DNA of 63,398 nt, the filler included, from Salisapilia sapeloensis CBS 127946 (lineage: Eukaryota > Protista > Oomycota), in the NCBI GenBank assembly GCA_023334545.1. It is 7 parts of 7 records of this genome, joined end to end, with 100 filler letters (N's around TTAATTAATTAA, not from the genome) between each part and the next. Parts side by side here need not be neighbours in the genome. Positions count along the whole stretch, not along the records: positions 1 to 25,529 come from JAADVB010000249.1; 6 more parts are not named here. One strand, 5' to 3'. Shown here piece after piece: positions 8,086 to 9,977 of this stretch. Under the pieces are notes generated by a model that did no database searches, was not told the DNA's origin, and saw nothing but the letters and a program-made list of their open reading frames with translations. Both the position numbers and the translations under genes were made by a program. The number at the start of each line of letters is the position of its first letter. Position 1 is the first letter of the stretch.

Positions 8086-9977
8086 ATGCTGCACCTCCGA
8101 CGTGTCTTGACTACCGTGCTGCACGGACCCTCCACCCAAGTGCGATGGAAAAACGCTGCGGCACTCATGTCGGACGTCCACGGGACCACCCACGGCAAGA
8201 AGCACTGGCGCAATCGCCCCCTCTTCCGACGCGGTGGGGACAAAAAGTTTCGCAACGGACAAGAGGCCGCCGAAATGCTGTATGTCTGGCTTGAAGCGCT
8301 TTATTAAAAATATTTAACTCATGTACGCTGTAGAATGGATGAGGCGCAACGTCGGGATCCAAACCAGGTGCGCATGTACCACCGAAACATCTTTCGGATT
8401 TGCTTGTAGGCTCTTTTCCCGTCACTAACGCTCTTCATCTGCTACTATTGCATGGAACATCTACCTTAATAGGATGAGTACGTTGCGACTTTGTCATGCA
8501 TCCCTCCGCTAGTACTAACAGATCTTTTTACAACGAGTAGCTTCTTGGAAGCAGTCGGACTCTTCCTCGACTCGGTCGAACCTGTCTTTGACCGCTACCC
8601 CAAATATGCGTGGGTGATGAAGACCCTCATGGAGCCGGAGCGAGTCATCCAGGTACCGAACACATTCTACAATGTCGAAACGTACATGACCAATTGCTCC
8701 TTGGGCACTTGATGTAGTTCCGCGTGCCTTGGATCGACGAGAGTGGCAACATGCGCGTCAACCGAGGCTTCCGCGTGCAGTTCTCCAGCTCTCTCGGTCC
8801 GTTCATAGGTGGGCTACGTTTCCACCCGAGCAACGACCTGAGCACAGCCAAGTTCCTCGGCTTTGAAGGTGTCTTCCGAAACGCTCTTGCTGGTACATTT
8901 CAACGAATTTATCAGTTGATACACTAGCACTAAGGCTCTCCTTCATGTAGGACCCTTCGGTGCAGCCCATGGTGGCGCTGACTTTAACCCCGTGGACAAG
9001 AGTGAGGCTGAAGTCATGCGCTTCTGTCAGAGCTACATGACCGAGCTGGCCAACTACATTGGTCCACACACGGACACTCCGACGGCCGGTGTCGGTGTTG
9101 GCTCCAAAGAAATCGGTTACATGTTTGGCCAGTATAAGCGTCTTCGTCAGCTGAACCCTGCCGGTGCGGAAGGGATCATCTCAGGAGGCGTTCACTATTA
9201 CCCGCAGGTCGTTGGCCACGGCGTCGTCCACTTTGCGAATGAAGTACTCCAGTCGAGAGGAGAATCGCTGAAGGGGAAGCGGTGCCTCATCTCTGGCTCT
9301 GGTATCGTCGCCATCAGCGTTGCTGAGAAGCTGCTCGAGTACGGAGCCATTCCCATTGGCATGAGCGACTACTTCGGCTACGTGATCGAGCCAGAAGGAT
9401 TCACGTCGCGCAACGTCAAGGACATTATGTCGCTCAAGGAGGATAGAAACGCACGTCTGGGAGGCTACGTCATGACGTCCACATCTGCCCAGTACTACCC
9501 GGCGGAGGAAGGCAGTGTGTGGGACACACCGTGCGACTACGCCTTCCCATGCGCCATCCAGAACGACATCACGGGGGATGTGGCCAAGAAGCTCATCCAG
9601 AACGGATGCCAGGGCGTCTTCGAAGGAGCCAACATGCCGTGCAACGGACAGGCCATCGAGATGTTCCGCCAGCAGGACCTGGCGTATGCGCCCAACAAGG
9701 CTTCCAACAGCGGATCGGTTGCGCTCGCGGCCAAGAACTTGGGCAACACGGAGCTGTCTGCAGAAGAGCTGGACGCCATCATCAAAGGTGAGAGAATTGT
9801 GGGTATTGCATTAGCTTGGACTAATGTGGAGACTTTGTAGAGTACATGCAAGGTGTGTTCGAAACGGTGAGCGCCACGGCCGCAGACTTCAACATGACCG
9901 GCAACCTGAACGCTGGCGTCAACATCACGGGCTTTATGCGCGTCGCCAACGCCATGTTCCGTCAAGGCGTCGTGTAG
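8086..9977 (+). CDS. NADP-glutamate dehydrogenase (GdhA-type) homolog, multi-exon, predicted catalytically inactive; mitochondrial-type N-terminus
   Basis: [49 protein letters not shown] and [15 protein letters not shown] motifs. Exons approx. 8086-8279, 8334-8367, 8473-8477, 8551-8660, 8719-8902, 8951-9788, 9841-9977. Confidence 0.9.

What the first reader, a model, noticed from the sequence alone, without database searches (positions are those of the whole stretch)
8086..9977. Intact glutamate dehydrogenase paralog that has lost every recognisable catalytic residue (pseudo-GDH)
Against the GdhA consensus: GPYKGG becomes GPFIGG (substrate-binding Lys to Ile, 8805-8807); EQIFKN becomes EGVFRN; GGGKGG becomes GAAHGG (Schiff-base Lys to His, 8968-8970); PAGDIG becomes PTAGVG (catalytic Asp to Gly, 9088-9090); and the TGK...RPEATG segment is shortened to SGG...YPQVVG. 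Yet the frame, splice sites, oligomer-forming N-terminus, Rossmann fold (GSGIVA, EGANMP) and C-terminus are preserved, and there is a mitochondrial-type presequence. This pattern suggests selection for a non-catalytic role, such as a regulatory subunit of an active GDH or an NAD(P)/metabolite sensor. Precedent: the inactive regulatory GdhA subunit of Thermus thermophilus. I am not aware of such a subunit being described in oomycetes.
Basis: partly seen in the sequence, partly recalled or inferred. Interest (0 to 1): 0.8.

Follow-up and report, generated by a model that had tools for sequence, protein, structure and literature searches.

The report
Conserved catalytically dead glutamate dehydrogenase homolog
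This expressed oomycete gene encodes a glutamate-dehydrogenase look-alike that has lost its catalytic residues; the same dead form, with a new N-terminal arm, is conserved across oomycetes, diatoms and brown algae, yet databases label it an active NADP-GDH.

Summary
Positions 8086-9977 (+) hold an intact, transcribed class-I GDH-family gene. Its product has Ile, Arg, His and Gly in place of the substrate Lys, the second carboxylate Lys, the catalytic Lys and the catalytic Asp. RNA contigs correct the gene model to 7 exons, one of them a 5-nt micro-exon, giving 497 aa.

The losses are not private to this genome. A monophyletic family contains no member with the catalytic Lys (UFBoot 100 / SH-aLRT 97 after removing the decayed columns). 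It covers oomycetes (Phytophthora, Peronospora, Pythium, Globisporangium, Saprolegnia, Aphanomyces), diatoms, brown and yellow-green algae, and unnamed relatives. Every subclade examined carries a family-specific N-terminal arm (DVHG...WRNKPLFRRxGD..F..G.EA).

Selection is strongly purifying: dN/dS is 0.03-0.15, and 34 of the 40 listed differences from a close relative's transcript are synonymous.

Ten of 16 ligand contacts known from a solved NADP-GDH complex are replaced, including two of the three 2'-phosphate ligands. NAD(P) binding is therefore doubtful.

The P. infestans ortholog (XP_002904619.1) is listed as "the" GDH in a published nitrogen-assimilation gene table.

The non-catalytic status is well supported. 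A Thermus-like regulatory-subunit role is untested, and I found no active class-I partner in oomycetes. I found no prior description.

The parts
8040..10073 (+). Transcript span (5' UTR from about 8040, 3' UTR to about 10073)
   Evidence: Spliced RNA contigs of 1602-1632 nt, 100% identical to the window, in runs X1-X3
8086..8279 (+). Exon 1. Start codon 8086-8088. Presequence-like residues 1-28 (4 R/K, no D/E). Family-specific N-terminal arm from about 8167 (DVHG 8173-8184, WRNRPLF 8206-8226)
8334..8367 (+). Exon 2 (…[11 protein letters not shown])
   Evidence: Joint 8279|8334 and end at 8367 in RNA contigs
8473..8477 (+). Exon 3: 5-nt micro-exon GATGA, flanked by AG and GTACGT
   Evidence: RNA contigs carry ATGA between 8368 and 8541. 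This is the only GATGA in the interval and it has AG/GT flanks. Using it restores the frame and the canonical spacing.
8541..8652 (+). Exon 4 (FLEAV…EPERVIQ), start of domain I
8718..8892 (+). Exon 5: GPFIGG (Ile 8805-8807 in place of the gamma-carboxylate Lys) and EGVFRN (Gly 8868-8870 for Gln, Arg 8877-8879 for Lys)
8951..9787 (+). Exon 6: GAAHGG (His 8968-8970 for the catalytic Lys), V188 8992-8994 (for the 2'-phosphate Lys), PTAGVG (Gly 9088-9090 for the catalytic Asp), YPQVVG (Tyr 9199-9201 for Arg), GSGIVA 9295-9312 (Ile 9304-9306 for Asn), SDY (Tyr 9370-9372 for Ser), K336 9436-9438 kept, EGAN 9622-9633 kept, A433 9727-9729 (for Ser)
9841..9977 (+). Exon 7: C-terminal helix, stop TAG 9975-9977
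5580..6464 (-). Neighbouring COQ5/UbiE-type methyltransferase gene. It serves as a syntenic marker of orthology and is not functionally linked.
   Evidence: Pfam PF01209, E 5e-86. The same family lies just upstream of the orthologs in Peronospora farinosa and Pythium insidiosum.

Best explanation
The gene encodes a 497-aa protein with a mitochondrial-type presequence and the fold of a class-I (50-kDa, hexameric, NADP-type) glutamate dehydrogenase. It cannot carry out GDH chemistry. It is this genome's ortholog of an old, monophyletic stramenopile family that lost the catalytic Lys and the gamma-carboxylate Lys in every member. Most members also lost the catalytic Asp and the other substrate ligands. 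The family gained a conserved N-terminal arm of about 35 residues.

Most likely mechanism: the protein still folds and assembles through its highly conserved domain-I core into a GDH-like oligomer in the mitochondrion. There it acts non-catalytically, as a binding, regulatory or scaffold protein. The working surfaces would be the new N-terminal arm and the remodelled inter-domain cleft. At most a partial adenine-nucleotide site would remain in the Rossmann domain.

Shown here: gene structure and expression; loss of 10 of 16 ligand-contacting residues; monophyly and breadth of the family; the arm as a shared derived character; strong purifying selection; retained fold (modelled on the 75%-identical Globisporangium ortholog).

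Inferred, not shown: mitochondrial location, oligomeric state, lack of any enzymatic activity, and what the arm and cleft bind.

Confidence is about 0.85 for 'no GDH activity, kept for another role' and 0.6 for the full statement.
For: - Family and fold: Pfam ELFV_dehydrog_N plus ELFV_dehydrog. The AF2 model of ortholog P0121 has pLDDT 87 and pTM 0.85. Its best structural matches are class-I GDHs, with TM 0.84/0.93 to C. glutamicum GDH.
- Dead site: positions that are K, Q, K, K, D in 216/216 canonical sequences are I, G, R, H, G here. Of the 16 residues that contact 2-iminoglutarate and NADP+ in SpGdh1 (PMC12301742), 10 are replaced.
- Equivalog test: ortholog P0121 scores 475.9 against the NCBIfam NADP-GDH equivalog cut-off of 536. 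A canonical stramenopile GDH scores 699.8.
- Conserved clade: named orthologs with the same losses occur in Phytophthora, Peronospora, Peronosclerospora, Plasmopara, Hyaloperonospora, Pythium, Globisporangium, Saprolegnia, Achlya, Aphanomyces, Tribonema, Discosporangium, Ascophyllum, Chaetoceros and Synedropsis.
- Monophyly: in the quick tree a 46-row clade without a single canonical member has SH-aLRT 99. In the careful tree, with the 64 decayed columns and the arm removed, 34 pseudo rows form one side of a branch at UFBoot 100 / SH-aLRT 97.
- The N-terminal arm is present in every subclade examined and absent from the four canonical GDHs aligned alongside. Part of it is modelled as ordered, at pLDDT 72-80.
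- Selection: pairwise dN/dS is 0.03-0.15 on the large exon. Of 40 listed differences from a roughly 95%-identical relative's transcript, 34 are synonymous and 6 are not.
- Expression: fully spliced transcripts in three RNA runs, and in a related organism.
- Orthology: conserved COQ5 neighbour.
Against: - No biochemical data exist, so activity on another substrate cannot be excluded from sequence alone.
- Within oomycetes the replaced cleft residues are themselves fairly conserved (R169, T218, G220 and V221 are 100%). That could mean a new ligand site rather than a dead pocket.
- The Gly-rich loop and the S228, K276 and N340 equivalents are kept, so some dinucleotide binding remains possible.
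- Mitochondrial targeting rests only on presequence composition.
- Oligomerisation is inferred from conservation of domain I, not modelled.
- The structure model is of an ortholog, not of the window protein itself.
Confidence: 0.6

Rival explanations
1. Thermus-type regulatory subunit. The dead protein co-assembles with an active class-I GDH into a hetero-hexamer and tunes it, for example by sensing an amino acid or nucleotide.
For: There is a precedent: T. thermophilus GDH is a heterohexamer of catalytically inactive regulatory GdhA and catalytic GdhB subunits (PMC9570180; PMC12301742). Domain I, which builds the hexamer, is the best-conserved part of the pseudo-GDH. Some ochrophytes do have canonical class-I GDHs, for example Heterosigma P0157.
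Against: No canonical class-I GDH from any oomycete appeared among the listed hits of three searches. In the stored part of a published P. infestans metabolic gene table, EC 1.4.1.4 occurs once, at PITG_07671, assigned K00262; I infer it is the pseudo-GDH ortholog, while the two other GDH genes found there are assigned to the NAD-type orthology group K00260. The family is retained in obligate biotrophs. Identity to canonical GDH is only about 45%, and the family has its own N-terminal arm. The Thermus system is a different subclass, at 22% identity. As I recall (not checked here), classical enzymology (LeJohn 1971) reported only NAD-linked GDH activity in oomycetes.
Confidence: 0.15
2. Neofunctionalised enzyme. 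The cleft has been rebuilt to bind a different substrate and catalyse another NAD(P)-dependent, or cofactor-independent, reaction.
For: Selection is strongly purifying. Several replaced cleft residues are conserved within oomycetes. The Gly-rich loop, K336 and EGAN are retained.
Against: The replacements are not conserved between subclades. The K89 position is M/I/V in oomycetes and E in ochrophytes. K113 is R versus S/A/T. K125 is H/A versus V/A/S. A shared new catalytic apparatus is therefore not visible. The nicotinamide, pyrophosphate and 2'-phosphate ligands are also replaced. To my knowledge no active ELFV-family enzyme lacks both the catalytic Lys and the catalytic Asp.
Confidence: 0.08
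3. Decaying relic. The gene is a non-functional leftover that is merely still transcribed.
For: All key catalytic residues are lost.
Against: The reading frame is intact across 7 exons and correctly spliced. dN/dS is 0.03-0.15, and 34 of 40 listed differences are synonymous. Orthologs are kept across the oomycete-ochrophyte divergence and in gene-poor obligate biotrophs.
Confidence: 0.02

Closest known systems
Class-I (S50_I) hexameric NADP-specific glutamate dehydrogenase (E. coli GdhA, C. glutamicum GDH 5IJZ/5GUD, S. pombe Gdh1 9KL6, P. falciparum GDH 3R3J)
   Same: Both Pfam domains, the length of the core, and the two-domain fold (TM 0.84/0.93 for the ortholog model). Identity is about 40-47%. 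The domain-I core, GxGxxA loop, SD motif, K276 equivalent and EGAN are conserved.
   Different: It lacks the catalytic Lys and Asp, all the Lys, Gln, Arg and Ser side chains that bind the substrate carboxylates, two of the three 2'-phosphate ligands and the pyrophosphate Asn. It has 1- and 2-residue deletions next to the active-site loops. It carries an N-terminal arm of about 35 residues plus a presequence. The ortholog scores below the NCBIfam equivalog cut-off.
Thermus thermophilus GdhA, the catalytically inactive regulatory subunit of the GdhA/GdhB heterohexamer (PDB 3AOE)
   Same: It is a GDH-fold protein described as catalytically inactive and kept for a regulatory role (PMC9570180; PMC12301742).
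   Different: It is bacterial and belongs to another GDH subclass (22% identity to the model). It works with a co-expressed active paralog. Here no active class-I partner was found in oomycetes. The family is eukaryotic, probably mitochondrial, arose independently and has a unique N-terminal arm.
Bacillus subtilis 168 GudB, a cryptic inactive GDH allele (recalled, not checked here)
   Same: A GDH-family protein that is enzymatically inactive as encoded.
   Different: GudB is inactivated by a recent 9-bp duplication in a laboratory lineage and reverts readily. The family here has been inactive since before the oomycete-ochrophyte split and is under purifying selection in its inactive form.

Membership tests
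ELFV (Glu/Leu/Phe/Val) dehydrogenase superfamily, class-I 50-kDa GDH fold | Pfam PF02812 (dimerisation domain) plus PF00208 (NAD(P)-binding domain) above the gathering scores | tested here: met
   Exon translations score 61.9-171 bits against cut-offs of 23-25. The full-length ortholog scores 157.9 and 195.9 bits.
ELFV (Glu/Leu/Phe/Val) dehydrogenase superfamily, class-I 50-kDa GDH fold | Two-domain GDH fold | tested here: met
   AF2 model of the 75%-identical ortholog P0121: pLDDT 87. Foldseek top hits are all class-I GDHs with TM up to 0.84/0.93. The window protein itself was not modelled because a spliced product cannot be referenced.
Functional NADP-specific glutamate dehydrogenase (EC 1.4.1.4; NCBIfam NF006929; KEGG K00262) | Catalytic Lys (CsGDH K125 / SpGdh1 K113) and catalytic Asp (D165 / D153) | tested here: not met
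   H180 and G220 in the window. These positions are K and D in 216/216 canonical sequences. They are H/A and G in all 18 oomycete rows.
Functional NADP-specific glutamate dehydrogenase (EC 1.4.1.4; NCBIfam NF006929; KEGG K00262) | Substrate carboxylate ligands (K89, Q110, K113, R205, S380 in CsGDH; K77, Q98, K101, R192, S377 in SpGdh1) | tested here: not met
   I145, G166, R169, Y257 and A433. Only K-to-R at 169 is conservative.
Functional NADP-specific glutamate dehydrogenase (EC 1.4.1.4; NCBIfam NF006929; KEGG K00262) | NADP(H) contacts (SpGdh1 S228, N230, S252, K121, K276, N340) | tested here: inconclusive
   Kept: S290, K336, N401. Replaced: I292, Y314, V188. Binding itself was not measured.
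Functional NADP-specific glutamate dehydrogenase (EC 1.4.1.4; NCBIfam NF006929; KEGG K00262) | Score at or above the curated equivalog cut-off (536 bits) | tested here: not met
   Ortholog P0121 scores 475.9 bits. The canonical Heterosigma GDH scores 699.8 bits.
Thermus-type regulatory GDH subunit of a heterohexamer | An active GDH paralog of the same subclass in the same organism that co-assembles with it | not testable with these tools
   The rest of the genome is not available. No oomycete canonical class-I GDH appeared among the listed hits. In the stored part of the P. infestans gene table, EC 1.4.1.4 occurs once, at PITG_07671 (K00262), inferred to be the pseudo-GDH.
Thermus-type regulatory GDH subunit of a heterohexamer | Common descent with, or the same subclass as, T. 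thermophilus GdhA | tested here: not met
   3AOE matches at 22% identity and rank 45, behind all class-I GDHs.
Stramenopile pseudo-GDH family (defined here) | N-terminal arm motif DVHG…W(R/K)N(K/R)PLFRRxGDxxFxxGxEA ahead of the GDH core | tested here: met
   Window residues 30-65. The motif is present in oomycete, ochrophyte and unnamed subclades and absent from canonical GDHs.
Stramenopile pseudo-GDH family (defined here) | Placement inside the clade that lacks K89 and K125 | tested here: met
   SH-aLRT 99 for the 46-row clade. UFBoot 100 / SH-aLRT 97 with the decayed columns and the arm removed. The window groups with the Pythium/Globisporangium/Phytophthora rows.

The most novel reading that the evidence does not exclude
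An ancient, stramenopile-wide family of mitochondrial GDH-fold pseudoenzymes, marked by a unique N-terminal arm, is the only class-I 'NADP-GDH' gene that oomycetes possess. If so, oomycetes have no NADP-GDH at all. The family would then perform a partner-independent, non-catalytic function that is still unknown, for example sensing nitrogen or redox state, or acting as an assembly or scaffold factor. That function would have been important enough to be kept since before oomycetes and ochrophytes diverged, and through genome reduction in obligate biotrophs.
Probability: 0.45. Interest if true: 0.7.

Novelty: new variant of a known kind. Interest (0 to 1): 0.6.

Why it matters
First, annotation and metabolic modelling. 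Sources name the oomycete orthologs "NADP-specific glutamate dehydrogenase", and a published P. infestans gene table carries one as K00262 / EC 1.4.1.4. The P. infestans ortholog is the GDH entry in a published nitrogen-assimilation table (PMC6264045). If it is dead, ammonium assimilation and glutamate catabolism routes in important crop and fish pathogens need re-drawing, and possibly in diatoms and brown algae too.

Second, it is a clean, deep example of a metabolic enzyme turned pseudoenzyme. It has intermediate states (subclades that still keep Gln, Lys or Asp) and a gained peptide arm. This makes the question of what a GDH shell does once it stops being an enzyme directly testable in tractable organisms such as Phytophthora and Phaeodactylum.

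Third, it gives a eukaryotic counterpart, of independent origin, to the Thermus inactive GdhA subunit.

Tried and rejected
- My first gene model from sequence alone joined 8375 to 8541. RNA contigs showed this was wrong and revealed the micro-exon.
- Ten literature searches found no description of an inactive GDH-like protein in oomycetes or other stramenopiles. This is absence within the held library only.
- I looked for protein-level evidence in a Saprolegnia proteome paper. SPRG_01659 is not in the text or the held supplements.
- I searched for a canonical oomycete partner using the Heterosigma canonical GDH. None appeared in the top 120. This is inconclusive because the list is truncated.
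- Protein-atlas look-ups meant to name the unnamed subclades were uninformative, as was the cluster look-up.
- Three papers on GDH evolution and the Thermus system were not held.
- I did not model the window protein itself or any hexamer. A spliced product has no reference, and typing it in was avoided.
- I rejected the idea that the pseudo clade is an artefact of convergent loss. It stays monophyletic after the decayed columns are removed.
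Full report
**Observation.** The region 8086-9977 (+) contains a spliced gene of the Glu/Leu/Phe/Val dehydrogenase family. Translations of its exons hit Pfam ELFV_dehydrog_N and ELFV_dehydrog with E-values down to 4e-50. 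They align over their full length with solved class-I GDHs from Plasmodium, Corynebacterium and E. coli.

**Gene model and expression.** My first model, built from GT..AG sites alone, had six exons. Public RNA runs hold the locus. Assembled contigs of 1602-1632 nt, 100% identical to the window, cover 8040-10073 with the introns removed. They confirm five of my junctions. Between 8367 and 8541 the mRNA carries the extra letters GATGA. This is a 5-nt micro-exon at 8473-8477, the only GATGA in that interval, flanked by AG and GTACGT. The corrected CDS has 7 exons (8086-8279, 8334-8367, 8473-8477, 8541-8652, 8718-8892, 8951-9787, 9841-9977). It encodes 497 aa and reads RRDPNQDDFLEAV, which restores the canonical spacing. 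No ATG lies between the transcript's 5' end and 8086. Residues 1-28 have 4 Arg/Lys and no acidic residue, which fits a mitochondrial presequence. That location is an inference.

In the 216 full-length canonical sequences, the five positions K89, Q110, K113, K125 and D165 (C. symbiosum numbering, from my knowledge of Stillman et al. 1993) are invariant. The window has I, G, R, H and G at these positions. I then mapped the residues that contact 2-iminoglutarate and NADP+ in the S. pombe Gdh1 complex (PMC12301742) onto the alignment.
- Replaced: K77→I145, Q98→G166, K101→R169, K113→H180, K121→V188, D153→G220, R192→Y257, N230→I292, S252→Y314, S377→A433.
- Kept: G155, S228, K276, N340, N370, V374.

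So every side chain but N340 that holds the substrate is replaced. Two of three 2'-phosphate ligands, the pyrophosphate Asn and the nicotinamide ligands are replaced too. The Gly-rich loop and the strand-end SD survive, but cofactor binding is doubtful. The NCBIfam equivalog model for NADP-GDH scores the closest full-length ortholog at 475.9 bits, under its 536-bit cut-off. A canonical stramenopile GDH scores 699.8.

**Not private to this genome.**
- A search with the large exon found oomycete proteins with the same substitutions, followed by the yellow-green alga Tribonema. The length filter of that search hid the full-length orthologs.
- A profile search recovered Peronospora, Pythium insidiosum, Phytophthora cactorum and P. 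fragariaefolia, Saprolegnia, Achlya, Aphanomyces, the brown alga Discosporangium and the diatom Chaetoceros.
- Cluster look-ups added Globisporangium (including G. ultimum K3WVV7), P. infestans, P. nicotianae, Plasmopara halstedii, Hyaloperonospora, Ascophyllum and Synedropsis.
- Motif checks confirm the same losses in these sequences.
- A scan of 1.84 billion representatives with the family profile gave further unnamed subclades.

**Phylogeny.** In a 110-row tree, 46 rows form a clade with SH-aLRT 99, and none of them has the catalytic Lys. Shared losses could pull sequences together artificially. I therefore removed the 64 decayed columns and the N-terminal region and ran a careful mixture-model search. 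The 34 pseudo rows remained one side of a branch, with UFBoot 100 / SH-aLRT 97, in 100% of the 200 bootstrap trees examined. Inside the clade the oomycete and ochrophyte groups are each well supported. The unnamed subclades still keep Q110 (9 of 10), and some keep K113 or D165, but none keeps K89 or K125. This looks like stepwise decay after one initial inactivation. The window's nearest relatives are Globisporangium (75% identity), Pythium insidiosum and then Phytophthora (69% to P. infestans).

**A gained feature.** Every subclade examined carries, between a variable presequence and the GDH core, a conserved arm: (L/M)xxDVHG…W(R/K)N(K/R)PLFRRxGDxxFxxGxEA. The four canonical GDHs aligned alongside start after it. 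Its residues top the list of positions conserved in the family but absent from canonical sequences. Pfam has no model for it. In the AF2 model of the Globisporangium ortholog (pLDDT 87, pTM 0.85), residues 1-41 are disordered. The WKNKPLFRREGDKKF stretch is modelled at pLDDT 72-80 with short beta-bridges to the body. What it does is unknown. It is the best candidate for the family's new function.

**Selection.** On the large exon, pairwise dN/dS among Peronosclerospora, Phytophthora, Peronospora, Pythium and the window is 0.03-0.15. dS is often saturated, which can only make these ratios conservative for the closer pairs. Independently, the transcript of a roughly 95%-identical relative (run X5) has the same splicing. 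Of its 40 listed differences, 34 are synonymous and 6 are conservative replacements. The COQ5-type methyltransferase neighbour is shared with Peronospora and Pythium, which supports orthology.

**What it is like, and what it is not.** The fold is class-I GDH: Foldseek gives TM 0.84/0.93 to C. glutamicum GDH at 43% identity. T. thermophilus GDH is a heterohexamer with catalytically inactive regulatory GdhA subunits (PMC9570180; PMC12301742). But that protein belongs to another subclass (22% identity, rank 45) and works with an active paralog. For oomycetes I found no such partner.
- All oomycete-named hits in three searches belong to the pseudo clade.
- In the supplementary metabolic gene table of Ah-Fong et al. 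2019, EC 1.4.1.4 occurs once in the stored part of the file, at PITG_07671, assigned K00262. PITG_08802 and PITG_11116 are assigned to the NAD-type group K00260 (the stored file is truncated).
- The P. infestans protein named "NADP-specific glutamate dehydrogenase, putative" (XP_002904619.1 / D0N8V3) is a member of the pseudo family, with GPYMGG, FRN, GGAHGG and PTAGVG plus the arm.
- The same accession is the "Glutamate dehydrogenase" entry of the nitrogen-assimilation table in PMC6264045, where orthologs are listed for the downy mildews as well.
- That PITG_07671 equals XP_002904619.1 is my inference from the shared name and the single EC 1.4.1.4 entry. I did not verify it.
- As I recall, classical enzymology (LeJohn 1971) found only NAD-linked GDH activity in oomycetes. 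That would fit, but I could not check it here.

**Verdict.** The gene is a bona fide, expressed, selectively maintained pseudo-GDH. I put about 0.85 on "no GDH activity and retained for another role". I put about 0.6 on the fuller statement that it acts as a non-catalytic oligomeric binding or regulatory protein through its new arm and remodelled cleft. A Thermus-like hetero-hexamer role gets 0.15, a new enzymatic activity 0.08 and a functionless relic 0.02. I found no description of this family in ten full-text searches. Pseudoenzymes, and an inactive GDH subunit, are known kinds. This is an independent, eukaryotic, much broader variant with a distinctive added arm, and it is currently annotated as an active enzyme.

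Noticed in passing
window 8473-8477: A 5-nt micro-exon (GATGA, AG|…|GTACGT) is used in all RNA contigs. Orthologs in Phytophthora, Peronospora and Pythium have a single intron at this spot and encode the two residues in the following exon. The window's gene has 6 introns. The Phytophthora, Peronospora and Pythium orthologs have none at the window's FRNALAG|PFGAAHGG junction, and their gene-to-CDS lengths leave room for few introns.
   Followed up: partly
window 13684-25011 (+): An uninterrupted ORF of 3775 aa has no Pfam hit at E<=0.001. That is unusually long for a protein with no recognisable domain.
   Followed up: no
window 1724-4339 (-), 4624-5295 (+), 5580-6464 (-): The neighbouring ORFs are an 871-aa protein with many EF-hand pairs, a Methyltransf_16 (lysine methyltransferase-like) protein, and a COQ5/UbiE methyltransferase. 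The last is syntenic with the pseudo-GDH in Peronospora and Pythium.
   Followed up: partly
L002 8199-8400 (Phytophthora cactorum), L001 5900-6100 (Peronosclerospora sorghi): Public gene models of orthologs look wrong. P. cactorum KAF1772348.1 reads through the intron after RRDPNQ (…PCVASFQRAVDRLQP…). P. sorghi PsorP6_016760 omits the N-terminal arm, although the DNA upstream encodes it. Several P. cactorum, P. idaei and Peronospora belbahrii models in the orthologs' 90% clusters are 779-1555 aa, and some are named protein kinases; they look like fusions with the downstream kinase gene, which I did not check.
   Followed up: partly
proteins P0245, P0251, P0265, P0321; P0232, P0285; P0333, P0360; P0243, P0275 (representative library): Outside the stramenopile family, several other GDH-like lineages also lack the catalytic Lys and/or Asp (signatures AQRAE, CTRFD, IQKMD, WQTYD, RQKAE, KQKAD, KQKDG and others). 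They sit among canonical sequences in the tree. Loss of GDH catalysis therefore seems to have happened repeatedly.
   Followed up: no
run X5 versus window 8893-8954: The related organism's transcript differs at the exon 5/6 junction, with two other letters (CT) between 8893 and 8954. It otherwise shares all splice sites, including the micro-exon letters.
   Followed up: no
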